Below, one piece after another: positions 6,759 to 52,620 of a stretch of 64,000 bases of DNA; the first letter of the stretch is position 1, and each line of letters begins with the position of its first letter. Made by a program: the position numbers and the translations under genes. The notes beneath the pieces were generated by a model. The model searched no databases and was not told where the DNA came from. It was given only the letters and a program-made list of their open reading frames with translations. The DNA is from Octopus bimaculoides (lineage: Eukaryota): contig NC_068990.1 in NCBI RefSeq assembly GCF_001194135.2, forward strand, positions 48,322,400 to 48,386,399, given 5' to 3'.

Positions 6759-6979
6759 GTCCAAATAATAGATACTGATACAGTGGTTAGTTGATATAAT
6801 AAAAGAGTTCTTCACTTTACAAGGAAAGTAGGAAAAACAAATTAAAAAGAAGACAGTCAGTATTGTTGATATCAGTTTATGAGAGGATATTAAAGATGTC
6901 TACCTGAGTCCACAACAAAATCAGATGAATCAGTGTTTACATACTGTTGAGGAGAATCTGTTAAATCTGACTGAACAAA

Positions 6980-9900
6980 TTAATGTGATGGTTGAGTGTT
7001 ATATTTTGCTTTGTTCCTGTTGGGTGTAGCAGGATTTGGTAACATTTCAGAAGCAGATGAAGTATATTCAAAAGCATCACTTAATTCTGTGGGTTTAAAG
7101 ATATTGTCATCCTCATACAAAGGATAATTCAGTGCTTTTGCTGAATATTGATTTTCAGGAGATTGTTTTAAGTGTTTGTAGTTTCTAGAAGTATTATTAT
7201 TTAGGAATTGTTGATATGCAATTTTTTCATCATTGAGAACCATATCACGGAGATTTGCAATTGCAGACATTTCTCTAACAGGATGACTTTGAGATGAGCA
7301 TGATTCTAAAAATGATGGGGTGTCTTGATAATTTCTTTCTCTAGGAGAAAAATCTGACGTAATAGATTTTGCTTTGACAGGACTATCAGTATCATTCCAT
7401 TTAGATAGTGTGTCTGTTTCCGAATTATTCTCAAAGTGTGAATCAATTTCAGTTTCATTTACACTTTCAGTGAAATGAGGTGAATAATTTTTCTGAGACT
7501 GTCTCAATTTTATTGCAGGTTTTTGTGGATCATAATGATCAGAACTTGACTGTTTAGAAGGGTCTGATTCTGCATAAGGCTCTGATGACAGGTTTTGATG
7601 CTTGGGATATGATGAATATGATATAATGCCATTATTATATTCAACAGGATAACCAGAGATATTTGATTCTTTATCATCATCAGAATTCATTTCAACAAAA
7701 TATACTCCAGACTCAGATGTTTTGGACAAGTTTTTGTTATTGCTATCTGATTTAGATGGTTTTCCGAACTTTTCTGACTGAGAACTATTAGGTTCAATAG
7801 AAGTATATTCCTTGACAAAAGTAAAAGATTGATCATCAGGTTCCAGAGTATCTGTTCTAGTTACATCCTGATTAAATTCTAATTCAACTTTTAATTTTAT
7901 ACCGTCTTCCTCCAGAGGGTAGATATCCTCATTAGAATTTACACTGTCAAGTCCATATCCAGCTTTTTTATTCAAATATGTGTCTTCAATACTTTTTTGC
8001 TGAAGATTGTTTTCCTTTATAGGAAAATCAGCTGTATTGTGAGTTTCCAGTTTATTCCCATAGCTAGATTCATACTTAACAAATTCATTAGACTTTTCAC
8101 TTCTCCCAGAAGTTTTTATATTATTGTCGTTTTTAGCAAATAACTGTGGTCTTGTGTATGTATATATCCAATGTCCAGAATTTGTTTTGGAATCAGAAAG
8201 AAAAGATTCCTTCCTTTCAACCCAATAATCTAGCAATGGCTCTGAAACATCAGTGGTCATAGATGGTGCAGGAGGTAAGTTTTTATTTACTCCAACCACA
8301 TCATTAAATTGTTTTATGGTATTTTTTGTTTGTGCTAAATCCTTAACATCTAAGTTTTTATCTTCCTTCATTGGCATGGAGTATTGTTTCTGGTTATGCT
8401 TGATGCTAGCACTTCCAACTGATTCAGGGGTAGAATCATTTTTCTTAAAACCAATCCATGAACTGAATCTTGGTATTATTTTACTACTAGAGAGTGTATC
8501 TTCTGACACAGAGTTAAGATTGACTGCTTCAGATTCATTCTTTGATTGAGAAACTTTATTTCCAAACGAAACAGAAGTAGTTGATAAAGGTTTATGTTGT
8601 AATCCAAACCCTGATGATAATTTTTCCTCAAATGACTGAGAAATTACAGGTCTCTTTTTCTTCAATGATGCTTTACAGTTTGGAGAAAATGTGTTTTCTT
8701 TTCTGTCAATCCAGTGAACAGCTTCATCCTCAGGTTTACTAAGGACCAAAGTTGTATCACTGTTCTCCTTTTTATCATCAATACTTAGTTCCAGTTTATT
8801 ACTGGTCATTGTAGAGTGGACATCAAGTGAAGAACTACTTAGTTTATCTAATTCTTTCCCCATTTTTTTTGGCAATATTTTATTATCAGCAGATACGCTT
8901 ACTTCTGAACTAACTGCCTCTTTTGATTTTGGAGAAACCAAATTTGCCACATGTTTGTCAGCTGATATGTTTCCTTCTGAACCAAATGTCGTCTCTTTTG
9001 ATTTTGGAGAAGCCAAACTTGCCACATGTTTGCCAGCTGATATGTTTTCTTCTGAACCAAATGTTGTCTCTCTTCTTTTTGGAGAAGCCAAGTTTACCAT
9101 ATGTTTATCAGCTGATATATTTTCTTCTGAACCAAACGTTGTCTCTCTTCTTTTTGGAGAAGCCAAATTTGCCACATGTTTGTCAGCTGATATGTTCTCT
9201 TCTGAACCAAATGTTGTCTCCTTTGATTTTGGAGAAGCTAAATTTGCCACATGTTTGCCAGCTGATGTGATTTCTTCTGAACCAAATGCTGTCTCCTTTG
9301 ATTTTGGAGAAACCAAATTTGCCACATGTTTGTCAACTGATATGTTCTCTTCTGAACCAAACGTTGTTTCTTTTGATTTTGGAGAAGCCAAATTTGCCAC
9401 ATGTTTGTCAGCTGATATATTTTCTTCTGAACCAAATGTTGTCTCTCTTCTTTTTGGAGAAGCCAAGTTTGCCACATGTTTATCAGCTGATATGTTTTCT
9501 TCTGAACCAAACGTTGTTTCTTTTGATCTTGGAGAAGCTAAATTTGCCACATGTTTATCAGCTGATACGTTTTCGTCTGAACCAAATGTTGTCTCTCTTC
9601 TATTTGGAGAAGCCAAGTTTACGACATGTTTATCAGCTGATATGTTTTCTTCTGAACCAAATGTTGTCTCATTTCTTTTTAGAGAAGCCAACTTTGCCAC
9701 ATGTTTGTCAGCTCGTATATTTTCTTCCGAACCAAATGTTGTCTCATTTGATTTTGGAAAAGCCAAGTTTGCCACATGTTTATCATCTGACATGTTTTCT
9801 TCTGAACCAAATGTTGTCTCCTTTGATTTTGGAGAAACCAAATTTGCCACATGTTTATCAGCAGATATGTTTTTGTCAGGACTAAATGTTGATTCTTTCG

Positions 9901-12900
9901 CTTTGTATATCGTCATTTTTGCTAACTGTTTAACAGCAGATATGTTTTCTTTTGAGCCAAATGCTGTCTTTCTTTCTGGAGTAGCCAAACTCGCTACATG
10001 TTGTTCAGGTGATTTTTTTGTGTGTAGGCTAATGGTTGTCCCTTTTGCCACATGTTTATCCTCTGATATATTTTCTTCAGAACCAAATTCTGTCTCATTT
10101 CTTTTTGGAGCATTCAGTTTTGTTACATGTTTATCAGCTGGTACCTTTTCTTCTGAACCAAATGTAGTTTCTTTTGTTTTTGAAGAGGTCACTTTAGGAC
10201 CAAATGTTGATTCTTTTGTTTTGGGTAACGTCAATTTTGCTAACTGTTTCACAGCAGATATGTTTTCTTCTGAGCCAAATGTTGTCTCTTTTGTTTTTGG
10301 AGAAACCACATGTACCACATGTTTATCATTTTGTGTCTTTTTATCTGGATCAAAGGTTGTCTCTTTTGCCACATATCTATTTTTTGTTATACTTTTATCT
10401 GGCCCAAATGTTGTCACTTTTGTTTCTGGAGAATTCAAATTTGCATCAAGTTTGACAGCAGTTATGTTTTCTTCTGAACCAAATGTTGTCTCTTTTGATT
10501 TTGGAGAAACTAAATTTGCCACATGTTTGTCAGCTGATATGTTTCCTTCTGAACCAAATGTTGTCTCTTTTGATTTTGGAGAAGCCAAATTTACCACATG
10601 TTTGCCAACTGATATGTTTTCTTGTGAACCAAATGTTGTCTCTTTTGATTTTGGAGAAACTAAATTTGCCACATGTTTATCAGCAGACATGTTTTCTTCT
10701 GAACCAAATGTTGTCTCTTTTGATTTTGGAGAAACTAAATTTACCACATGTTTATCAGCAGACATGTTTTCTTCTGAGCCAAATGTTGTCTCTTTTGATT
10801 TTGGAGAAACTAAATTTGCCACATGTTTATCAGCAGACATGTTTTCTTCTGAACTAAATGTCTCTTTTCTTTTTGGAGAAGCCAAATTTTCCACATACTT
10901 ATCAGTTAGCACCTTTTCATCTGGACCAAATGTTGTCTCTTTTGCCACATGTCTATTCTCTGATATATCCTCATCTGGCCCAAACATTGTCTCTTTTGTT
11001 TTTGGAGAAGCCAAATTTGCCACATGTCTATCAGCTGATACCTTTGTGTCTGGACCAAATGTTGTTTCTTTTGTTTTTGGAGAAGTAACTTCTGCCACAT
11101 ATTTATTATCTGGTATCTTTATATCCGGGCCAAAAGTTGTTTCTTTTGATTTTGGAGGAGTCTTGTTTGTTACAAGTTTGTCAGAAGATATATTTTCATC
11201 TGGTCCATCTTTTGTTTTTTGAGAAGCCAAATTTGCCACATGCTTATCAGCAGATATGGTTCCAGATGTTTCATTTTCTAAATTCAGTTTCATATCAGGT
11301 TCACTACTGAACACCCCTACATTTTCATAAGTTGGTATATTCTTCTTATCAATTTGTTTATCAACATGAACATTGGATATGTTAGCAGTTGATTTATCAG
11401 ATTCACAGTGAGGTTTTGATACAACATCTTTGGGACAATCTACAGTTGTTTCACTCTTATAATCAACATTTATTTTTAATGGAGCTTTGCAAGTTATTTC
11501 CTTAACTGGGGTGGTTATCAAACCAGATTTTTGCATAGCTTCACAAGTTCCAAATTTCTTTACTTCAGAATGATTACTACTTGAGAATTTCTTTACTTTA
11601 TTATCTGATTGGGAATGTCTAGGAGGACTTTGATCAACTCTACCTGGTCTATTTTCAGCATACTTCTCTGGAAATGACTTATAATCATTAGATGTAGATT
11701 TTTTCTCGTTTGAGTCATCTTTTTCAGATTTGTGCTTGCTTCTTGTTGCTTTTGTGCGCTCAGCAGAAAAGAATGTCTCTTTTCGATCTATCCAATAGAG
11801 AGATGTCTGCTGAGAGGTTTGGGCTGCAGTAATAGGCTTAGAAAGGGAACTACTAACTGTAGGCTTATCAGTTACTGGTTTTGATGCTAAGTGAGAGCTT
11901 ACATCAGAAGGGACCACATGACCTATAGATAAAATATCTCCAGAATTATTAGAAGTTTTAGGTTTACTTCTTTTGATGGTTTCTCTAGAACTAAGTGGTA
12001 ATTTAGTTTCTGTATGATCTATCCAATCATTTGTAGATGACAAAAGACTTGATTTAGTTGATATTAATTCAGGATGGATGGGTACCTTTCTACTATCACT
12101 GGCTGCAGGTAATAACCTAAGTTTATCATTGTTATATTTTTCAGGATCAGATACATCCTTCTGTTCAGATCTTATTCTTGAGACTTGGTTAGTGTTATTT
12201 GAAGGTGAAGGCAAGGATAGTGATATTTCATCTTTATGTGAAAAAGAATCCAACTGGGATTCCTTAACAGAGGAGATTATTTCTTTTTTGTCTTGAATAG
12301 GGCTTTTAGAATTATTAACTGAGTGAACACTTTTTGGTTTCGTGGCAAGAAACGTAGGTTCCTTTTGAGAATTAGGGTACTGGATACCAGAATCTGAGTG
12401 GAAGTCTTGAATATTAGTTTTGTAAAAATCTGTTTGTGGTTTATGTTGAATGGTATGATCTTTATCAGAAACTTGTCTACTTCCATTGTTTTCTGTTTCC
12501 TGAGACTCTGAAATTTGCTTATACTTAGCGTCCTTCACATCAGCCACTTGATTCTCTGGAGTATCTTTACTTGAATGATGAAGTGGCACTTCTCCTCTAA
12601 ATGAAAATCTAGATTTTCCTGCAACTGTAACTGTTTCTATTTGTGAATTTTTCTTCTTTTTAACATTCTTTACTTGCTCTGAAGAGCTCTTAGCTGGTGT
12701 ACATTTAGAATTTCTCTCACCTGAGGAGTCTTTAATACTTCTTTCAAGTAAATTCCTTGATACACTGTCACTGGGTTTCTTTCTTGAGAATACAATTCTT
12801 TGTTTTTCTTGGATTTGAATTTTTAACTCAGATCTGTCAATAAAATATGTATAATCTGGTGTGTCACTTGTTTTTACAGGAGTTGTTGCTTTTATATTTT

Positions 12901-15900
12901 CCCCAATTTGTTCATTTGCTTTCTTTACAGAAGACCAATTAGGGGAGGAAATTCCTGATGGAAATTTAGGTTTTATGGTAGTCCCAATTTCATCCTTTAG
13001 TACTTTCTTATTATCTGTCTGTTTAGGGGTTTGCTTCATCATTTTCCTAGCTTTATCATCATCTTCAGTAAGTGAAGATTTTTCAAACATTTTTCTTCTG
13101 GAACTGACAAATGAAGAAGCATTTTGGAAAGGAAGCCTTGGCTTGTCTGTTGCCTCAAGTTTTTCTTCAGGCATTTCATCATCTCTAGACTTTTCTACAT
13201 TTACTGTTGAAACTTTTTCAGAGCCATCTGTATTACTGGGAGATACTTTTATGTCCTTTTTAATTCTGTAGTATTTATCAAAGGGATTAAATGAATCATC
13301 TTCCCTTGGAGGCTGTTTGTTGGTAATTTTCCCACCAATTTTCTGAGAGGAACTTTTATCACTATGTTGACTATCACTTGATTGAACAGATGGGGATAGA
13401 AACTGTTGTTTCTCAGCAGACCCTATTTTTTCTTCTCTAGTATCTTTCACTGGTTTTTTAAGAAATTTGTCTTTACTGTCAGTATCATGTAGGACTGGGT
13501 CTTTTGTGAGAGAGTATGATTTTTTATCTCTCAGTTCATCTTTTGGTTTATCAACTTTTGAAATTTGAGGGACAGCTTTCTTGTCTTGAGCATCATCCTT
13601 ACTCTCCCTATCAGTTGAAAGTTGATTTGATTTCTTGATAGATGGAAATCTAGATTTTTGGATAAATGCAACTTTTTCCTCTTCTATTTCGTTATTCTGT
13701 TTAGGGAGTTGCTTGACCATTTTTCTAGCTTTATCATCATCTTCAGTAAATGGAGATTGCTCAAAGATTTTTCTTCTGTTGTTGTGAACGGAAGGAATAG
13801 CTTGGAAAGGAAGCCTTGGTTTATCTGTTGCCTCAAGTTTTTCTTCAGGCATGCCATCAACTCTTGACTTTCCTAAATTTACTGTTGAAACTTTTTCAGA
13901 GCCATCTGTAATACTGGGAGATACTTTGATGTCCTTTTTAATTCTGTAGTATTTATCAAAGGGATTAAATGAATCATCTTCCCTTGGAGGCTGTTTGTTG
14001 GTAATTTTCCCACCAATTTTCTGAGAGGAGCTTTTATCACTATGTTCACTACTACTTGATTGAACAGATGGGGATAGAAACTGTTGTTTCTCAGCAACCC
14101 CATTTTTTTCTTCGCTAGTTTCTTTCACTGGTTTTTTAAGAAATTTGTCTTTACTATCAGTATCATGTAGGATTTTTGTTGACAATTTGGTTGATGGATC
14201 TTTTGAATCAGAACGTGCTTGGTCATCTGTCTGTTGGGATTTCTTTACAACTTTTCGTTCAGTTTCATGTGTTGATGTTATTTTGGGGGCAACAAGCTCC
14301 TCTATGTTGTCTTTATCTTCTTTATCATAGAAAACTTTTGTTGGAAGTTGACTTGGTATATTGACATCAGATGGAAATCTAGATTTTTGGACAAATGCAA
14401 CTTTTTCTNNNNNNNNNNNNNNNNNNNNNNNNNNNNNNNNNNNNNNNNNNNNNNNNNNNNNNNNNNNNNNNNNNNNNNNNNNNNNNNNNNNNNNNNNNNN
14501 NNNNNNNNNNNNNNNNNNNNNNNNNNNNNNNNNNNNNNNNNNNNNNNNNNNNNNNNNNNNNNNNNNNNNNNNNNNNNNNNNNNNNNNNNNNNNNNNNNNN
14601 NNNNNNNNNNNNNNNNNNNNNNNNNNNNNNNNNNNNNNNNNNNNNNNNNNNNNNNNNNNNNNNNNNNNNNNNNNNNNNNNNNNNNNNNNNNNNNNNNNNN
14701 NNNNNNNNNNNNNNNNNNNNNNNNNNNNNNNNNNNNNNNNNNNNNNNNNNNNNNNNNNNNNNNNNNNNNNNNNNNNNNNNNNNNNNNNNNNNNNNNNNNN
14801 NNNNNNNNNNNNNNNNNNNNNNNNNNNNNNNNNNNNNNNNNNNNNNNNNNNNNNNNNNNNNNNNNNNNNNNNNNNNNNNNNNNNNNNNNNNNNNNNNNNN
14901 NNNNNNNNNNNNNNNNNNNNNNNNNNNNNNNNNNNNNNNNNNNNNNNNNNNNNNNNNNNNNNNNNNNNNNNNNNNNNNNNNNNNNNNNNNNNNNNNNNNN
15001 NNNNNNNNNNNNNNNNNNNNNNNNNNNNNNNNNNNNNNNNNNNNNNNNNNNNNNNNNNNNNNNNNNNNNNNNNNNNNNNNNNNNNNNNNNNNNNNNNNNN
15101 NNNNNNNNNNNNNNNNNNNNNNNNNNNNNNNNNNNNNNNNNNNNNNNNNNNNNNNNNNNNNNNNNNNNNNNNNNNNNNNNNNNNNNNNNNNNNNNNNNNN
15201 NNNNNNNNNNNNNNNNNNNNNNNNNNNNNNNNNNNNNNNNNNNNNNNNNNNNNNNNNNNNNNNNNNNNNNNNNNNNNNNNNNNNNNNNNNNNNNNNNNNN
15301 NNNNNNNNNNNNNNNNNNNNNNNNNNNNNNNNNNNNNNNNNNNNNNNNNNNNNNNNNNNNNNNNNNNNTTTTTTAAGAAATTTGTCTTTACTATCAGTAT
15401 CATGTAGGATTTTTGTTGACAATTTGGTTGATGGATCTTTTGAATCAGAACGTGCTTGGTCATCTGTCTGTTGGGATTTCTTTACAACTTTTCGTTCAGT
15501 TTCATGTGTTGATGTTATTTTGGGGGCAACAAGCTCCTCTATGTTGTCTTTATCTTCTTTATCATAGAAAACTTTTGTTGGAAGTTGACTTGGTATATTG
15601 ACATCAGATGGAAATCTAGATTTTTGGACAAATGCAACTTTTTCTTCTTGAACTTCGTTATTACGAAGGTCAACTGTCCGTTTACTGGGCTGTTTGATTA
15701 TTTTTGTTGCTTTATCATCTTCAGTAAATGGGGATTGCTCAAACATCTTCTTTCTGGAACTGTCAGCTGACAGAGTACTTTGGAAAGGAACCCTTGGCTT
15801 CTGTATTGATTGAAGCTTTTCTTCACTGAATCCATTTATGTAAGACTCTTCAGTTTTTTTCATTGTAATGTCTAAAGTTTTGCCAGGAGAAAATTTAACA

Positions 15901-16078
15901 TCTCTCCTGTTTGCAGAAAAGAGACTGTCAGATTCTTTTTGCACAGACATTGTAGAATGTTTAGACTTATCAGATTCACCAAATTGGTCAGAATGAACTT
16001 GCTGCTTCTCTCCAGTAAAGGTAAGTACATCACCATCCTCCTTACCTACCAGGCCTAAAGGTTTGACAGATTCACTTT
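6980..16078 (-). CDS. Giant coding exon (probably terminal) of an unidentified gene; intrinsically disordered S/K/E/T-rich protein with tandem repeats
   Basis: Acceptor ctttttactccttgcag|AA AGT GAA at 16079/16078 (phase 1). The frame is open through 15950 (MSVQKES...) to the gap at 15369 and again from 14408 to TAA at 6982-6980. The two ORF-track entries (14379..15950, 6980..15463) join via the identical 277-bp gap flanks. A stop-free run of about 2,600 codons in AT-rich DNA is not expected by chance. Confidence 0.88.
8905..11265 (-). repeat. Coding minisatellite: about 33 units of 75 bp (25 aa, consensus ADKHVANLASPKSKETTFGSEENIS)
   Basis: Directly visible in DNA (recurring tctgaaccaaatgttgtctc...gccacatgttt) and in translation; a few units are shortened in frame. 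Confidence 0.97.
13040..14165 (-). repeat. In-frame tandem duplication inside the giant exon, period 678 bp (226 aa)
   Basis: LHDTDSKDKFLKKPVK...DDSFNPFDKYYRIKK...KPRLPFQ...TEDDDKARKM occurs twice (tatcatgtagg at 13483 and 14161). A third, more diverged partial copy lies at about 15650-15830. Confidence 0.93.
14132..15645. other. Assembly gap (14409-15368) flanked by an identical 277-bp direct duplication
   Basis: 14132-14408 reads identical to 15369-15645. The offset of 1237 is not a multiple of 3, so the gap length is an estimate. Confidence 0.92.
16046..16078 (-). CDS. Candidate 33-nt mini-exon (xK/E-SESVKPLGLV-G) formed by an internal donor at the start of the giant exon
   Basis: Minus strand ...GGC CTG GTA G|GTAAGGAG. 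Phase 1 in, phase 1 out, matching the phase-1 acceptor of exon 2091-1895. Confidence 0.55.
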
Positions 16079-30087: not shown

Positions 30088-30568
30088 NNNNNNNNNNNNN
30101 NNNNNNNNNNNNNNNNNNNNNNNNNNNNNNNNNNNNNNNNNNNNNNNNNNNNNNNNNNNNNNNNNNNNNNNNNNNNNNNNNNNNNNNNNNNNNNNNNNNN
30201 NNNNNNNNNNNNNNNNNNNNNNNNNNNNNNNNNNNNNNNNNNNNNNNNNNNNNNNNNNNNNNNNNNNNNNNNNNNNNNNNNNNNNNNNNNNNNNNNNNNN
30301 NNNNNNNNNNNNNNNNNNNNNNNNNNNNNNNNNNNNNNNNNNNNNNNNNNNNNNNNNNNNNNNNNNNNNNNNNNNNNNNNNNNNNNNNNNNNNNNNNNNN
30401 NNNNNNNNNNNACACACATATATATATATATACATATATATACATATATACATATATATACACACACACACACACATATATATATATACATATATATACA
30501 TATATACATATATATACACACACACACATATATATATATATACATATATATATATACATATATATATA

Positions 30569-35967: not shown

Positions 35968-36019
35968 NNNNNNNNNNNNNNNNNNNNNNNNNNNNNNNNN
36001 NNNNNNNNNNNNNNNNNNN

Positions 36020-43405: not shown

Positions 43406-46400
43406 CATCATCATCATCCATCAATTTAAATCCGGGTTTTGTCCCCATTAATGGAGGTGGCTGGATCTACCTCAATGTCATAGCAACCACCCTCACACCA
43501 TCTTGCCACCTTACTCAGTTTTGGGCGTCCTCCCTTCTCAAGTCAATCCTCCCAATCTCCTCCTCCACCTGTCCCCTCCACATTTTCCTCAGACTAAGTT
43601 GCTTTCACTGTCCATTTACCTCAAACTCTAGCACCCCCTTTAGAACATGCTTCTCATCCCTCCTCAACACATGCCCATACCACCACACTCCATTCACTCT
43701 TGCTAGCCATTCCACTGATTCCTCCAACCCCAGCATCCCCATCAAGTCCTCAGTCCTCCTCTTTTCAAACAGCCTCACGCCACACATTTCTCTCACTATT
43801 GCTCTCTCAGTCCTTCTCAAAATTGCCATCTCTCTCTTCCTCAAACACCATGTCTAACTCCCATACAGCATTGCAGCTCTCACACAACTCCTACAGACCT
43901 TTCCTTTTGTCTTCAATGAGAACCTTTTCCCATATAACAATGCTCCACATTCCCTGAACTTCACCCTGCCAAGTCTTGCTCTTGCTGTCACAGCTGCTTC
44001 ACATTCACCACTTACATCCACCCTGTCTCCCAAATAACAAAACCCTCTCACCATCTCCACCTCGTCACATAGTGTTTCCACTGACTTCACCAGCCCTCCA
44101 ACTCCTTTCTCACATCTTCCACAAACAAACTCTCTTGCCAGTCTTGGGATTACCTTCTTGATTTTCGTACATCTACTATGAATCCATTTCTCACATCTTA
44201 CACAACACTGCATTTGCCATTACCCTCCTCACACATACACCACATGGACCTACCTTACTCACTAACACTTCTCCTGCCACCCCACTCACTATCACCTTTG
44301 TCTTCCCGAGGTTTACCTTCAAATTCTTGCTTTCAAATGCCTCCTTCCATTTCCAAAACTTCTCCCTCAATCCTTCCATCATCTCACTCATCAGAACAAG
44401 GTCATCTGCATACAGTATCTCCATTAGCAATCCCTGTCTTGCACTCTCCATCACTACGTCAACCACTATTGCAAACAGCAATGGTGACAACACAGATCCC
44501 TGATGCACACCAACTTTCACCACAAACTCCTCCAACAGCTCTGATCCAATTCTCACTCTTGTCTCTACCCCCTCATATAAACTCATCACTGCTCTCATTA
44601 TTACCTCTAGTACACCTGTCTTCCTCAATGCCCACTCAATCACCTTCCTTTGAACCCTATCAAATGCCTTCTCCAGATCAACGAAGCACATGTACAACTC
44701 TTTCCTCTTATCTCGGTATTCCTCCTGCAATTTACTTACAGTGAACCCTGCATCTATTGTCCCCCTTCCTGGCATAAAACCAAATTGCATCTCATCCACA
44801 TCCACCCCTTTCTGAATTCTCCTGTCCAACGCCCTTTCCACTATCTTTATTGCATGCTCCAATAACTTCACTCCTCTATACACTCCACAACTCATCGCAT
44901 TCCCTTTCCCCTTGGAGATTGGTACCACCACACTTAGTGCTCAATCATCTGGCATTCCTCTTCCATCCAGCATACCCTGGCAGAGCTCCATTCATCACAA
45001 CAGTCCCTATCTCTCCACTTGCAGTTATCATTTCCACACTTACTTCTGATGGACCATTTGTCTTTCCTGTTTTCATTTCCTTCATTGCCTCCGCTACTTC
45101 CTCCTGACTAATCCTCTCCACTGGCCCCTTCACTACAGCAGTTTCCACCCTCTGATCCCATTCATTCTCCTCATTCATAATTCCCTCCATGTGCTCTTTC
45201 CAAATTCTTCTCCTGTCCTTCTTACTAAAATTCAACCTTCCATCACTCCTCCTCATGCATCTTCCTCCCTCAACATCTCTGCCATCATTTTTCATTGATT
45301 TAATAAACCTAAACACTATCTGGGTTCTCATCCAGCCTGCTCAACCTCTCCTCAGCCTCCTTCCTCATAGATCTTGCAACCACCCTCTTTGTACGATTCT
45401 TCATGTTATTATAACTGGCTTTCATTTGCTCAGTCCTATTATTACATAAATCTTTGTGTGCCGCCTTCTTCCTCGCTATAGTATCCCTCACCTCCTTATT
45501 CCACCACCACGTATCTCCTTGATCTCTCCTACCTTTTGTCCTTCCACACACTTCATTACAAGCCTTTAGTACCCCTTCTTTAAAAGACTTCCACAAATCC
45601 AGTGCATCAATGCTTACCAACTCCCCAACTCTCTCCTCAAACCATGCTCTTGTTTCTTCTTCCTTCAGTTTCCACACCTTTCTTCTCTCAAGTGTTCCCT
45701 TTCTCACATGCTTTTTAACTTTCCTCTGATCCAAGTCAGCAAACACCAATGTGTGCTGCAACCCTCAGGGTATTGTCTTCACATCTCTCTGATATTTTCT
45801 GTTTTTCCTGCCAACCAATATGAAATCAATCTCTATTTCATTCCCTCCTGCACTGAAAGTAACCTTCCTCTTCTCTGCTTTCCTAAACCACGTATTCACC
45901 ACACACAACTCTTTCGCATCACAAAACTCCAACAGTATCCTTCCTTCCAAATTTCTCTCCCCAATTCCATTTCCCCCATGCACACACCCTCAAGCCCTGG
46001 ATCTATTTCCCAACATGTCCATTAAAATCACCCATGCCCAAAACCAATTCATCTACCTTTTGTAAAGTCCCACTCATTCGCCATATCATCAAAGAACTGC
46101 TCTTTTTCAGCGATCCCTCTTCCACTTTGTGGACCATACCCACAAATCACCCTTACCACTTCTTCCTCAAATGCTAACACTACTGACATCACTCTGTAAC
46201 TCTTTCTCCTGACTGCCACCACCTTCTCAAGATTTCTTCCTTCACTAAAACTCCCACACCTCCAGTCTCCTTGCTATTTTCCAACCATCACAACTTGTAC
46301 CTTTTTCCCTTGACCCCCACAAATCTTGCACCCTAGCTCCTCCATCTAACCTCCTGCACACAGCACACATCCATCCTCCTCTTCCTCAATTCCTCACACA

Positions 46401-48874: not shown

Positions 48875-49250
48875 CTGTTATCTAGTGGTCATTTACATGG
48901 ATGATTTAAAGCTCTTTACAAAAAATGACCAACAACTCAAGGGCTTACTAGCGATTGTTAAACAATTCATTGATGACATCAGGGTGCAATTTGGCCTCGA
49001 TAAATGTGCAAAAGATACTTTTATCAAAGGAAAAATGACAGAAACATTTAATGTTAACCTAGACCAGCAGAATGTCATAAAAGAGTTAGAACCAGCGGAG
49101 AGCTACAAATATCTAGGGGTACTTGAAGATGGAATTGGGCATTCAGTGATGAGGGAAAGCATCAGAAGAGAACATTATCGCAAGGTGAGAGCAATATTTA
49201 AGAGCTGAATGCAAGAAACAGGATCAAAGCGATCAATGCTTTAGCCTGAA
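48875..49250 (+). mobile_element. R4/Dong-type RT fragment
   Basis: YMDDLKLF...DIRVQFGLDKCAK...ESYKYLGV. Confidence 0.8.
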
Positions 49251-50738: not shown

Positions 50739-51651
50739 NNNNNNNNNNNNNNNNNNNNNNNNNNNNNNNNNNNNNNNNNNNNNNNNNNNNNNNNNNNNNN
50801 NNNNNNNNNNNNNNNNNNNNNNNNNNNNNNNNNNNNNNNNNNNNNNNNNNNNNNNNNNNNNNNNNNNNNNNNNNNNNNNNNNNNNNNNNNNNNNNNNNNN
50901 NNNNNNNNNNNNNNNNNNNNNNNNNNNNNNNNNNNNNNNNNNNNNNNNNNNNNNNNNNNNNNNNNNNNNNNNNNNNNNNNNNNNNNNNNNNNNNNNNNNN
51001 NNNNNNNNNNNNNNNNNNNNNNNNNNNNNNNNNNNNNNNNNNNNNNNNNNNNNNNNNNNNNNNNNNNNNNNNNNNNNNNNNNNNNNNNNNNNNNNNNNNN
51101 NNNNNNNNNNNNNNNNNNNNNNNNNNNNNNNNNNNNNNNNNNNNNNNNNNNNNNNNNNNNNNNNNNNNNNNNNNNNNNNNNNNNNNNNNNNNNNNNNNNN
51201 NNNNNNNNNNNNNNNNNNNNNNNNNNNNNNNNNNNNNNNNNNNNNNNNNNNNNNNNNNNNNNNNNNNNNNNNNNNNNNNNNNNNNNNNNNNNNNNNNNNN
51301 NNNNNNNNNNNNNNNNNNNNNNNNNNNNNNNNNNNNNNNNNNNNNNNNNNNNNNNNNNNNNNNNNNNNNNNNNNNNNNNNNNNNNNNNNNNNNNNNNNNN
51401 NNNNNNNNNNNNNNNNNNNNNNNNNNNNNNNNNNNTTGAGATTTTTGAAAAAAAATTTCAGAATCGGAATCTCCATAGCCTAAAACGTGGGATTCCATTA
51501 AAAAAAAAAATAAAACAAGGGGGGAAAGGTTCAGATTACATATAGTCCATCTCTACCTAGAGAAATATATTATTCAAAAGAATTCCAACTCTGTGTGTTT
51601 TTTTATGTTTTATTTATATTCTTATAAAATTAATGTGGGATATAATATATA

Positions 51652-52109: not shown

Positions 52110-52440
52110 TTGTTAAGATTGGGTTTGAATTTCTTAATAAAGTCCTTTTCTCTCCGTTATCTCTCAATTTCATTCAGGTTGTAAAGTTTATGAAATGGAA
52201 GTATCATAAAAGTTTTTCGACCACATGTTGCCAGATGGTTACTCAGTGGTATTTGGCGGACCTCTGGGTTTTTAATCTGTTGTCGATGCACATGCAAGCA
52301 TTCTGATAGTGCATTACCTGTCTGGCCAACGTATAGTTCTTCACAATTTGGGCATTTGATGCAGTAGATTAGATTTCTACTTTTGCAGTTCATGTTCACA
52401 TTGATGAATATTTTCCACAAAGTAAGGAATTGAGAAATAT
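52110..52440 (-). mobile_element. Penelope-like element GIY-YIG endonuclease fragment
   Basis: MNCKSRNLIYCIKCPNCEELYVGQTG...VHRQQI...HL...E...IKKFKPNLN (IY...YVG motif, CxxC). Confidence 0.9.
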
Positions 52441-52620
52441 CATTACAGATCAAACTATAACTCTCAGTAAGAAGAGACAACCTAAAAACTTGAAAAAGCT
52501 ATTAACAAAGGCAAGGTTTGACCTCAGCAACAAAAATCAAACATTCACTGTGTCTAAATGCAATGATAGCCGATGCGGTACATGCCAATTAATTCATACC
52601 AGCTCAAAAACAGGGAAAAC
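52430..52620 (+). mobile_element. Inverted upstream part of the same Penelope-like ORF (RT-endonuclease linker)
   Basis: KRQPKNLKKLLTKARF...SKCNDSRCGTCQLI is the region that normally precedes the GIY-YIG domain, here on the opposite strand. Confidence 0.75.

What the first reader, a model, noticed from the sequence alone, without database searches (positions are those of the whole stretch)
8905..11265. Unfamiliar 25-aa tandem repeat (ADKHVANLASPKSKETTFGSEENIS x about 33) carrying about 18 S-P-K sites
Seen: about 780 aa of 25-mer repeats. Each has a basic proline-directed site (SPKSK, or SPKRR in a subset that fits S-P-x-K/R) and an acidic FGSEEN half. Established: SP-rich repeat tails in neurofilaments (KSP) and Futsch/MAP1B are phospho-tuned spacers or microtubule-associated regions. 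Speculation: KSK...GSEENI...KH loosely echoes the tau/MAP2 repeat (KSKIGSTENLKH) but lacks KXGS and PGGG. I do not recognise this repeat as a named family.
Basis: partly seen in the sequence, partly recalled or inferred. Interest (0 to 1): 0.7.

Follow-up and report, generated by a model that had tools for sequence, protein, structure and literature searches.

The report
Octopus Rab-effector 25-residue repeat array
The 25-amino-acid repeat is real and translated: it is the tail of a giant octopus vesicle-adaptor (Rab-effector-like) protein, it occurs only in octopods, and its best-conserved part is ETTFGS rather than the SPK site or anything tau-like; its partner and function are still unknown.

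Summary
Confirmed. On the minus strand, window 11254..8894 encodes 787 aa (31.5 unit-lengths) of a 25-aa repeat with 18 SPK sites. It lies in a giant exon (16078..6980) of Octopus bimaculoides LOC106879475, which one RefSeq model mis-names "titin".

The orthologues in O. sinensis and Argonauta hians begin with a melanophilin/Slp-type Rab-binding FYVE_2 domain and have no C2 domains. The gene is therefore a giant Slac2/exophilin-like Rab effector.

A unit profile searched against 1.84 billion representative proteins found only these octopod orthologues. Pfam and PDB gave nothing, and there is no tau/MAP2 match.

Argonauta carries 114 units. Across the two families the conserved part is the contiguous core PKSKETTF[G/D]S. 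Codons 16-21 (ETTF[GD]S) show pN/pS of 0.15-0.18 in both lineages, against 0.44-0.73 for the unit flanks. Each lineage keeps at least one S-P-basic site per unit.

The AlphaFold2 beta-solenoid is probably the known perfect-repeat artefact.

Best reading: a disordered, multivalent, probably phospho-tunable array of docking motifs on a vesicle adaptor, with the partner unknown. I rate it a new repeat family within a known kind of protein, of moderate interest.

The parts
8894..11254 (-). The 25-aa (75-nt) tandem array, 787 aa. The 5' third (about 11254-9941) holds degenerate and short units. The 3' part (about 9940-8966) and a block at 10837-10463 hold near-identical units. The last unit decays into SPKSKEAVSSEVSV.
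6980..16078 (-). Giant coding exon that contains the array. The acceptor (polypyrimidine tract plus AG at 16080-16079) lies upstream; a TAA stop lies at 6982-6980. An assembly gap interrupts it.
   Evidence: matches RefSeq proteins XP_014784550.1 and XP_052826917.1
14409..15368 (.). Run of 960 N inside the exon, flanked by 277-nt copies that are 100% identical (14132-14408 = 15369-15645). This is most likely a scaffolding artefact. Removing 1,237 nt puts the two ORF pieces in one frame.
12857..14407 (-). Two copies of a large module of about 226 aa (678 nt). Each has an NPF motif (13966-13958, 13288-13280) and RRK[IM]FE..PFTEDDD. A third, partial copy lies at 15369-15950.
   Evidence: 3 copies in O. 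sinensis and 13 in Argonauta
8207..8224 (-). One of five W/F-[IV]-[DE]-R/H-K/T/S-E motifs. The others are at 8696-8713, 11777-11794, 12008-12025 and 12827-12844. Copies lie on both sides of the array, and the motif is conserved in all three species.
6890..6982 (-). TAA stop (6982-6980) where O. sinensis has Lys. It is followed by 29 in-frame codons, 28 of them identical to the O. sinensis C-terminus, and then the orthologous stop (6892-6890).

Best explanation
The array is the C-terminal repeat region of a giant, octopod-specific Rab effector of the Slac2/exophilin type. Such proteins have an N-terminal Rab-binding zinc-finger domain, no C2 domains and a very long low-complexity tail encoded by giant exons.

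Each 25-aa unit carries one conserved short linear motif, P-K-S-K-E-T-T-F-[G/D]-S. The strongest purifying selection falls on E-T-T-F-[G/D]-S. Next to it sits a proline-directed S-P-[K/R] site, with further Ser/Thr at i+3 spacing (S11, S14, T17 and T18, S21).

The most likely mechanism is as follows. The N-terminus is anchored on a Rab-positive vesicle or organelle. The array is an intrinsically disordered, multivalent platform that presents about 30 copies (64 + 47 in Argonauta) of one docking motif to a partner not yet identified. Phosphorylation at or near the motif would tune the avidity.

Shown here: the array, its reading frame, the orthology, the Rab-binding domain in the orthologues, the restriction to octopods, and the position-specific constraint.

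Inferred only: disorder, multivalent binding, phospho-regulation, and which Rab is bound.
For: - Gene identity. The window protein clusters with O. bimaculoides XP_014784550.1 and XP_052826917.1. The O. sinensis orthologue LOC115215841 matches at 72-81% identity by BLASTP over the 55-66% of the query it covers. It has FYVE_2 at residues 9-120, E 5.6e-18. Its best solved relative is the melanophilin Rab27-binding domain 2zet_C, E 3.5e-12, followed by Slp4 and rabphilin. The Argonauta hians orthologue (7,722 aa) has the same domain, E 2.5e-18. No C2, Rab_eff_C or other Pfam domain is found anywhere.
- Restriction. The unit profile against 1.84 bn representatives hits only the O. sinensis and A. 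hians proteins, plus two chance hits in unrelated repeat proteins.
- Conservation. Octopus SADKHVANLASPKSKETTFGSEENI compares with Argonauta terminal SPIRQLATxxSPKSKETTFDSVExx and Argonauta inner SPIKQLARQTAPISKETTSGSVENI. The shared part is a contiguous stretch, as expected of a linear motif, not an alternating in/out pattern.
- Selection. In 64 A. hians terminal units pS is 0.49, and pN/pS is 0.20 for codons 12-21, 0.145 for codons 16-21 and 0.73 for the rest. In 19 O. bimaculoides units pN/pS is 0.18 for codons 16-21 and 0.54 overall.
- Composition. The array is 29% charged and net neutral. Its hydropathy of 0.403 lies just on the disordered side of the Uversky boundary of 0.414.
- S/T-P density. 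There are 0.8 [ST]P per unit in Octopus and 1.7 in Argonauta, but only the chance level in the rest of the exon.
- Family precedent. Slac2 tails act as linkers to motors and cytoskeleton (PMC10511049).
Against: - No partner, phosphorylation or expression data were available. I could not inspect any transcript evidence behind the RefSeq models.
- The Rab-binding exons are not in the window, and the two O. bimaculoides RefSeq models start with other first exons. The link between the array and a Rab-binding domain in this species therefore rests on orthology.
- ETTF[G/D]S matches no linear-motif class that I could recognise from memory.
- Constraint in Octopus outside codons 16-21 is weak. Unit number also varies (31.5, 24.7 and 64+47 units), as it would in a loosely constrained spacer.
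- pN/pS among repeat units is confounded by gene conversion. In Octopus it is also biased by my choice of units close to the consensus.
- AlphaFold2 gives a moderately confident beta-solenoid for the near-perfect units.
- The hydropathy is close to the order/disorder boundary.
Confidence: 0.5

Rival explanations
1. The array is a loosely constrained, expandable low-complexity spacer. It sets the length and charge of the tail, or is nearly neutral. The conserved core then reflects recent amplification and gene conversion rather than a binding function.
For: - Unit number differs between close species: 787 aa in O. bimaculoides against 617 aa in O. sinensis. It differs massively in Argonauta.
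- Overall pN/pS is only 0.5.
- Inner Argonauta units are nearly identical at the DNA level (pS 0.09, pN/pS about 1), which shows recent amplification.
- O. sinensis models differ by multiples of 25 aa.
Against: - In the Argonauta terminal array the units are old (pS about 0.5), yet codons 16-21 keep pN/pS at 0.145.
- The same core is kept in two octopod families.
- The degenerate 5' units are conserved one-to-one between O. bimaculoides and O. sinensis.
Confidence: 0.2
2. The units fold into a regular beta-solenoid or beta-hairpin rod (two strands per unit). The rod would act as a rigid spacer or surface, with SPKSK in an exposed turn.
For: - AlphaFold2 on a single sequence of 8 units gives mean pLDDT 75.3 and pTM 0.68. 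The strands are I-SADKHVANLA and ETTFGS, and the loops are SPKSK and EEN.
- Weak Foldseek resemblance to beta-helix proteins.
Against: - AF2 is documented to give confident but unrealistic beta-solenoids for more than 40% of random perfect repeats (PMC11795689).
- On the heterogeneous part of the array, pLDDT exceeds 70 only over the five near-identical units and falls to about 40-55 on the degenerate and short units. Those units are nevertheless conserved between species.
- No PDB match reaches E<=0.001, and TM-scores are <=0.31.
- There are only about 6 hydrophobic residues per 25, and 29% of residues are charged.
- Short units of 14-18 aa would break the register of a solenoid.
Confidence: 0.12
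3. The array is a MAP-like cytoskeleton-binding region: a tau/MAP2-like microtubule-binding repeat or a neurofilament/Futsch-like KSP phospho-spacer.
For: - 18 SPK sites sit in a basic half-unit next to an acidic half-unit.
- SP[KR] is conserved in the Argonauta terminal array.
- Melanophilin, the closest solved relative of the N-terminal domain, binds F-actin and EB1 through its tail (PMC10511049, PMC2171176).
Against: - No match to the Tubulin-binding family or to any other Pfam family at E<=10.
- No tau or MAP chain in PDB at E<=10.
- 0 KXGS and 0 PGGG in the array.
- The unit is 25 aa, not 31-32 aa.
- The net charge of the array is about 0 rather than strongly basic.
- The most constrained residues are ETTF[GD]S.
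- No SxIP motif in the Octopus array.
Confidence: 0.1
4. The repeat is not protein-coding: a satellite, or an ORF artefact of a repeat.
For: All frames of a stop-free 75-nt repeat stay open. The plus strand also shows a 755-aa ORF.
Against: - The minus-strand frame continues for 1,051 codons upstream and 637 codons downstream of the array.
- It is collinear with the orthologous proteins of O. sinensis and A. hians, and the length differences between the arrays are in whole codons.
- The gapless A. hians assembly has the array inside a 9,747-nt exon.
- Synonymous differences exceed non-synonymous ones.
Confidence: 0.02

Closest known systems
Slac2/exophilin Rab27 effectors without C2 domains: melanophilin (Slac2-a), exophilin-5/EXPH5 (Slac2-b), MyRIP (Slac2-c)
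   Same: [quoted passage not shown] Its best solved match is melanophilin 2zet_C. They have no C2 domains, and a long low-complexity tail forms most of the protein. From my own knowledge, not tested here: EXPH5 is also about 2,000 aa, and one very large exon encodes most of it.
   Different: The protein is 3,000-7,700 aa long. It shows no Rab_eff_C or myosin-binding homology. The 25-aa array, the large NPF-containing modules and the WIDRKE motifs have no counterpart that any search found. Rab specificity is untested. In the word-indexed search with the N-terminal 263 aa, the only named hit outside cephalopods was a sea-urchin 'synaptotagmin-like protein 5'.
Tau/MAP2/MAP4 tubulin-binding repeats (Pfam PF00418)
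   Same: Tandem units of a few tens of residues, rich in K, S, T and G, in a protein that is probably disordered, with nearby proline-directed sites.
   Different: No profile match, no KXGS or PGGG, a 25-aa rather than 31-32-aa period, a net-neutral charge, and a different conserved core.
Neurofilament-M/H KSP tails and MAP1B/Futsch repeat regions
   Same: Many repeated S-P-K type sites in a charged repeat tail, plausibly a multi-site phospho-region.
   Different: No intermediate-filament rod or MAP1 homology. There is only about one S-P per 25 aa. The constrained element is ETTF[GD]S, which those tails lack. The comparison with those tails is from memory; no sequence was compared directly.
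FG-nucleoporin repeats with charged spacers (Nsp1-type FxFG)
   Same: One F-G dipeptide per K/E/S/T-rich unit of about 20-25 aa in Octopus (23 TFG).
   Different: In 55% of Argonauta terminal units G is replaced by D, and in 57% of inner units F is replaced by S. FG itself is therefore not the conserved feature. There is no nucleoporin context.
Multivalent linear-motif arrays in trafficking scaffolds, such as the NPF repeats of Rab11-FIP2 and rabenosyn-5 or the phospho-regulated 20-aa repeats of APC
   Same: The principle is the same: repeated short docking motifs in a disordered region of an adaptor, sometimes switched by hierarchical Ser/Thr phosphorylation. The same octopus protein also has NPF motifs in its large modules.
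   Different: The motif sequence differs and the partner is unknown. The analogy is from memory and is an inference, not a test.

Membership tests
Slac2/exophilin-type Rab effector | N-terminal Rab-binding domain (SHD1, FYVE-type zinc finger, SHD2; Pfam PF02318) | tested here: met
   Met in the orthologues: O. sinensis E 5.6e-18, A. hians E 2.5e-18, melanophilin RBD 2zet_C E 3.5e-12. The corresponding exons lie outside this window. They are also absent from the two O. bimaculoides RefSeq models, so for this species the feature is inferred by orthology.
Slac2/exophilin-type Rab effector | No C-terminal tandem C2 domains (this separates Slac2 from Slp and rabphilin) | tested here: met
   No C2 hit in the window exon or in the O. 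sinensis isoforms. The parts of the A. hians protein that were scanned also show none.
Slac2/exophilin-type Rab effector | Binds a GTP-bound Rab (Rab27, or Rab3/Rab8) | not testable with these tools
   Needs a binding assay.
Melanophilin/MyRIP subfamily | Myosin- and actin-binding C-terminal region (Pfam Rab_eff_C) | tested here: not met
   No Pfam hit in the 624-aa C-terminal region or in the 1,051 aa upstream of the array.
Tau/MAP2/MAP4 tubulin-binding repeat (PF00418) | Match to the family profile | tested here: not met
   hmmscan of the array at E<=10 lists only chance hits below threshold. The unit profile against all PDB chains at E<=10 gives 0 hits.
Tau/MAP2/MAP4 tubulin-binding repeat (PF00418) | KXGS and PGGG motifs in units of 31-32 aa | tested here: not met
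   0 K.GS and 0 PGGG in the array; the period is 25 aa.
Neurofilament / MAP1B / Futsch KSP-type phospho-tails | Dense repeated K-S-P / S-P-K sites | tested here: inconclusive
   18 SPK in 787 aa, or 0.8 [ST]P per 25 aa. These sites are real but much sparser than I recall for KSP tails.
Neurofilament / MAP1B / Futsch KSP-type phospho-tails | Intermediate-filament rod or MAP1 homology elsewhere in the protein | tested here: not met
   FYVE_2 is the only Pfam domain in the orthologues.
FG-nucleoporin repeats | F-G is the conserved element of each unit | tested here: not met
   In the Argonauta terminal array position 20 is D 55% / G 42%. In the inner units position 19 is S 57% / F 32%.
Titin (the RefSeq name of XP_052826917.1) | Ig-like and fibronectin-III domains, and a kinase domain | tested here: not met
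   No such Pfam hit in the 3,013-aa model at E<=10.
Beta-solenoid repeat proteins | A confident fold that holds across natural unit variation, with a solved structural analogue | tested here: inconclusive
   pLDDT is 75 on near-perfect units but below 50 on degenerate ones. No Foldseek hit reaches E<=1e-3. AF2 has a known repeat artefact.

The most novel reading that the evidence does not exclude
The 25-aa unit is a previously undescribed protein repeat family, so far seen only in octopods. Its core, PKSKETTF[G/D]S, would be a new linear docking motif, amplified to 30-110 copies on a giant Rab-anchored adaptor. One vesicle-bound molecule could then recruit dozens of copies of a partner (a motor, a cytoskeletal protein or a coat protein) in a phosphorylation-switchable way. 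This would be an octopod-specific way to build high-avidity vesicle tethers or condensates.
Probability: 0.3. Interest if true: 0.6.

Novelty: new variant of a known kind. Interest (0 to 1): 0.4.

Why it matters
The gene is annotated only as 'uncharacterized', or wrongly as 'titin'. Placing it as a giant Slac2-like Rab effector gives it a testable cell-biological context, namely vesicle or organelle positioning.

The array offers a clean natural experiment. The same 10-residue core is kept under purifying selection in dozens of copies in two octopod families, while the rest of each unit drifts. This makes the core an attractive bait for finding a binding partner.

It is also a cautionary example in two ways. 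AlphaFold2 returned a moderately confident beta-solenoid for what is probably a disordered repeat. And automated annotation produced more than 30 'isoforms' that differ by whole repeat units.

The finding does not bear on any long-standing open question, and its function remains inferred.

Tried and rejected
- Pfam on the exon, the array, the flanks and the RefSeq model found nothing except a sub-threshold MYRF_ICA chance hit.
- PDB sequence searches with the exon and with the unit profile at E<=10 found nothing.
- The search for homologous proteins with the N-terminal 263 aa of the O. sinensis protein returned only an ENA fragment and a sea-urchin Slp5.
- The search for homologous proteins with a three-species alignment of the C-terminal region returned nothing, not even the known orthologues, so that search was uninformative.
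- Exact look-ups of P0001, P0002 and P0018 found no contig. The O. sinensis gene spans 261 kb, so its DNA was not returned. No orthologous dN/dS between O. bimaculoides and O. sinensis could therefore be computed.
- The ENA contig L001 holds only the exon that precedes the giant exon, from a more distant cephalopod. It says nothing about whether that species has the repeat.
- Literature searches for the locus and accession names, and for octopus plus melanophilin, found no paper.
- An MSA of shifted unit blocks for structure prediction collapsed to self-overlap and was not used.
- Per-codon pN/pS using all 25 Octopus units, including out-of-register ones, was too noisy to interpret.
- From memory I considered LC8 TQT, SxIP, FFAT and phospho-FFAT, LIR, the gamma-ear DFGxPhi motif, EH class III (H[ST]F), the FHA pTxxD motif and the kinesin W-acidic motif as identities for the core. 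I rejected all of them. None fits both the Octopus and the Argonauta consensus.
- The divergence date of Argonautidae and Octopodidae was not found in the paper I consulted, so I give no date.

Full report
**1. The observation**

Tandem Repeats Finder reports a 75-nt period with 27.1 copies at 8918-10944 (score 1514) and 2.5 more copies at 10973-11157. On the minus strand one frame is open from 15463 to 6980. It crosses a run of 960 N, and the 2,476 codons after the gap are uninterrupted.

In that frame the array runs from window 11254 to 8894. That is 787 aa, or 31.5 unit-lengths. The consensus is SADKHVANLASPKSKETTFGSEENI. There are exactly 18 SPK sites: 11 SPKSK, 3 SPKTK, 3 SPKRR and 1 SPKRK.

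About 25 units are full length. Several are short forms of 14-24 aa, and most of these lack NLASPKS but keep [KR]HVA and KETTFG. The unit's DNA matches nothing else in the window.

**2. Is it coding?**

Several lines say yes.
- The frame continues for 1,051 codons upstream and 637 codons downstream of the array, in DNA of about 34% G+C. By inference, with roughly 7% stop codons expected per random codon, this cannot be chance.
- The 755-aa plus-strand ORF ends at the array edges, so it is the mirror artefact of a stop-free repeat.
- The exon has a polypyrimidine tract and an AG acceptor at 16080-16079.
- The translation is collinear with the orthologous proteins.
- Synonymous differences among units exceed non-synonymous ones.

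I could not inspect any transcript data.

**3. The gene**

Exact-sequence look-up places the protein with Octopus bimaculoides XP_014784550.1 (LOC106879475, 2,927 aa) and XP_052826917.1 (3,013 aa), which RefSeq names 'titin'. That name is unsupported, because no Ig, FN3 or kinase domain is found.

The O. sinensis orthologue is LOC115215841, with up to 3,205 aa and more than 30 predicted isoforms. It matches the window protein at 72-81% identity by BLASTP, over the 55-66% of the query that each isoform covers. The non-repeat C-terminal region is 91% identical. The protein starts with a FYVE_2 domain at residues 9-120, E 5.6e-18. The best solved relative of that domain is the Rab27-binding domain of melanophilin (2zet_C, E 3.5e-12), followed by Slp4 and rabphilin-3A.

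No C2 domain, Rab_eff_C domain or any other Pfam domain is present. By architecture the gene is therefore a Slac2/exophilin-type Rab effector. [quoted passage not shown]

The exons for that domain are not in the window. This is expected, because the O. sinensis gene spans 261 kb. The two O. bimaculoides models start with other first exons. For this species the link between the array and the Rab-binding domain is therefore by orthology only.

**4. Relatives of the repeat**

I built a profile from nine double units (A1) and searched it against 1.84 billion representative proteins. It found four proteins:
- the O. sinensis orthologue;
- a 7,722-aa protein of Argonauta hians (GAB1603083.1);
- two chance hits, a leucine-rich-repeat protein with TNFGSxEEI and a bacterial propeller protein.

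Pfam and PDB gave nothing, even at E<=10. The repeat is therefore not a described family. In these libraries it is confined to octopods.

Argonauta belongs to a different family of Incirrata. Its protein has the same FYVE_2 N-terminus and 114 units:
- 47 'inner' units, SPIKQLARQTAPISKETTSGSVENI, in runs of 3-7 inside large modules repeated about 13 times;
- a terminal array of about 64 units, SPIRQLATxxSPKSKETTFDSVExx.

The Argonauta locus comes from a gapless assembly. It has three small exons for the Rab-binding domain, an 855-nt exon, and two giant exons of 12,126 and 9,747 nt. The terminal array lies in the last exon. The arrays are therefore not assembly artefacts.

**5. What is conserved in a unit**

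The positions shared by Octopus and the Argonauta terminal array are S1, [KR]4, A7, S11 (53% in Argonauta), P12, K13, S14, K15, E16, T17, T18, F19, [G/D]20, S21 and E23. The shared part is a contiguous core, PKSKETTF[G/D]S.

| Units compared | pS (all) | pN/pS, all codons | pN/pS, codons 12-21 | pN/pS, codons 16-21 | pN/pS, flanks (1-10, 22-25) |
|---|---|---|---|---|---|
| 64 Argonauta terminal units, unfiltered | 0.49 | 0.49 | 0.20 | 0.145 | 0.73 |
| 19 well-aligned O. bimaculoides units | 0.22 | 0.54 | 0.63 | 0.18 | 0.44 |

In O. bimaculoides, codons 14-15 alternate between two old states, SK and RR, which both Octopus species share (pN/pS 1.9). Codons 11-13 (SPK) show no synonymous variation, so their ratio cannot be judged.

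Two caveats apply. Gene conversion confounds comparisons between repeat units. The Octopus units were chosen for closeness to the consensus.

The SPK site is real and is conserved in the terminal arrays. It is absent from the Argonauta inner units, which have A-P-I, and from the Octopus short units. Argonauta has a second site, S-P-I-[KR], at the start of each unit. [ST]P density is 0.8 per unit in Octopus and 1.7 per unit in Argonauta, but it sits at the chance level elsewhere in the exon. That shuffle test is inflated by the repetition itself.

**6. Structure**

AlphaFold2 on eight near-perfect units, given as a single sequence, produced a beta-solenoid-like model with pLDDT 75.3 and pTM 0.68. 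Foldseek found no PDB analogue: no hit at E<=0.001, and TM-scores <=0.31.

On 285 aa of the heterogeneous part, pLDDT exceeded 70 only over the five near-identical units. It fell to about 40-55 on the degenerate and short units. Those units are nevertheless conserved one-to-one between the two Octopus species.

AF2 is documented to give confident but unrealistic beta-solenoids for more than 40% of random perfect repeats (PMC11795689). The array is 29% charged, net neutral, and just on the disordered side of the Uversky boundary, at 0.403 against 0.414. I read the model as a probable artefact, but I cannot exclude a fold.

**7. Mechanism**

The best-supported reading is a disordered, multivalent array of one docking motif, ETTF[G/D]S with its basic PKSK flank, hung from a Rab-anchored adaptor. 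Proline-directed sites and Ser/Thr at i+3 spacing would plausibly tune it by phosphorylation. The partner is unknown, and no linear-motif class that I recalled fits both lineages.

The rivals are a loosely constrained spacer, a folded beta rod, and a MAP-like cytoskeleton-binding region. The tau/MAP2 resemblance fails every membership test. A cytoskeletal role remains conceivable, because melanophilin tails bind F-actin and EB1 (PMC10511049, PMC2171176).

**8. Verdict**

This is a real, translated, previously undescribed repeat family, restricted to octopods in these searches. It sits in a giant Slac2-like Rab effector. I rate it a new variant of a known kind, with moderate interest (0.4).

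Noticed in passing
window 14132-14408, 14409-15368 (N), 15369-15645: The 960-N gap inside the giant exon is flanked by 277-nt copies that are 100% identical. Removing one copy plus the gap (1,237 nt) brings the two ORF pieces into one frame. This looks like a scaffolding artefact. XP_052826917.1 carries the duplicated ~84-aa segment on both sides of the gap, while XP_014784550.1 does not.
   Followed up: partly
window 6890-6982 (-): A TAA stop follows ...YNTQPSH where O. sinensis has Lys. The next 29 codons stay in frame, 28 of them identical to the O. sinensis C-terminus, and end at the orthologous stop. This is either a very recent 29-aa truncation in O. bimaculoides or a base error. A-to-I editing could not rescue a TAA to Lys.
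   Followed up: partly
window about 8855-8875 (-), just after the array: O. bimaculoides reads ILPKKMGKELDK. O. sinensis has about 70 extra residues there (...SRTLPTITRYVSSLQSERTPPSIKSP), and their ITRYVSSL core is also present in Argonauta. That segment is nowhere in the window (tblastn). It is either a lineage-specific deletion or an assembly collapse. O. sinensis isoform X32 ends right after the array, which suggests a splice junction there in that species.
   Followed up: partly
window 12857-14407 and 15369-15950 (-): Large modules of about 226 aa (678 nt), each with an NPF motif (SFNPFDKYY) and RRK[IM]FEQSPFTEDDD. There are 3 copies in Octopus and about 13 in Argonauta, where each module also holds 3-7 of the 25-aa units. 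NPF is the classical EH-domain ligand, which hints at a link to endocytic or recycling machinery. I did not test this.
   Followed up: partly
window 8207-8224, 8696-8713, 11777-11794, 12008-12025, 12827-12844 (-): A recurring motif, [WF]-[IV]-[DE]-[RH]-[KTS]-E (for example YWIDRKETFFS, HWIDRKENTFS, YWVERKESFLS), lies on both sides of the array. It is conserved in O. sinensis and in Argonauta. I do not recognise it as a known motif.
   Followed up: partly
O. sinensis LOC115215841 isoforms (P0001, P0008-P0022): The predicted isoforms have lengths of 3205, 3180, 3155, 3130 and 3080 aa and so on, which are steps of 25 aa. The isoforms I inspected differ by whole units inside the array. These are more likely read-alignment or allelic unit-number effects than regulated splicing.
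   Followed up: partly
P0031 / L002 (Argonauta hians): Twenty-eight units contain L-A-T-Q-T-A-P, which carries a TQT like the dynein-light-chain LC8 anchor. The large modules carry K-S-S-I-P, which is SxIP-like, 14 times. Neither motif is present in the Octopus array or modules, so I did not build on them.
   Followed up: no
window 8955-11222 (+): A 755-aa ORF, and several shorter ones, lie on the opposite strand and are confined to the array. They are a by-product of a stop-free 75-nt repeat, not a gene.
   Followed up: yes
window 43854-45761 (-), 48885-49208 (+), 52157-52480 (-): Retroelement debris lies in what should be the long intron upstream of the giant exon. There is a reverse transcriptase (RVT_1, E 3e-28) followed by a weak, sub-threshold PHD-like match, a second RT fragment, and a weak GIY-YIG hit that may be Penelope-like. 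The other N runs (30088-30411, 35968-36019, 50739-51435) are bordered by TA/CA-type microsatellites.
   Followed up: partly
L001 (ENA metagenome contig ERZ21867824:ctg94213l), 9983-10783: A contig filed under a metagenome assembly carries the exon that precedes the giant exon. It comes from a more distant cephalopod: 56% identity to O. bimaculoides and 49% to A. hians. The gene therefore exists beyond these three species, but the contig ends before any repeat.
   Followed up: partly
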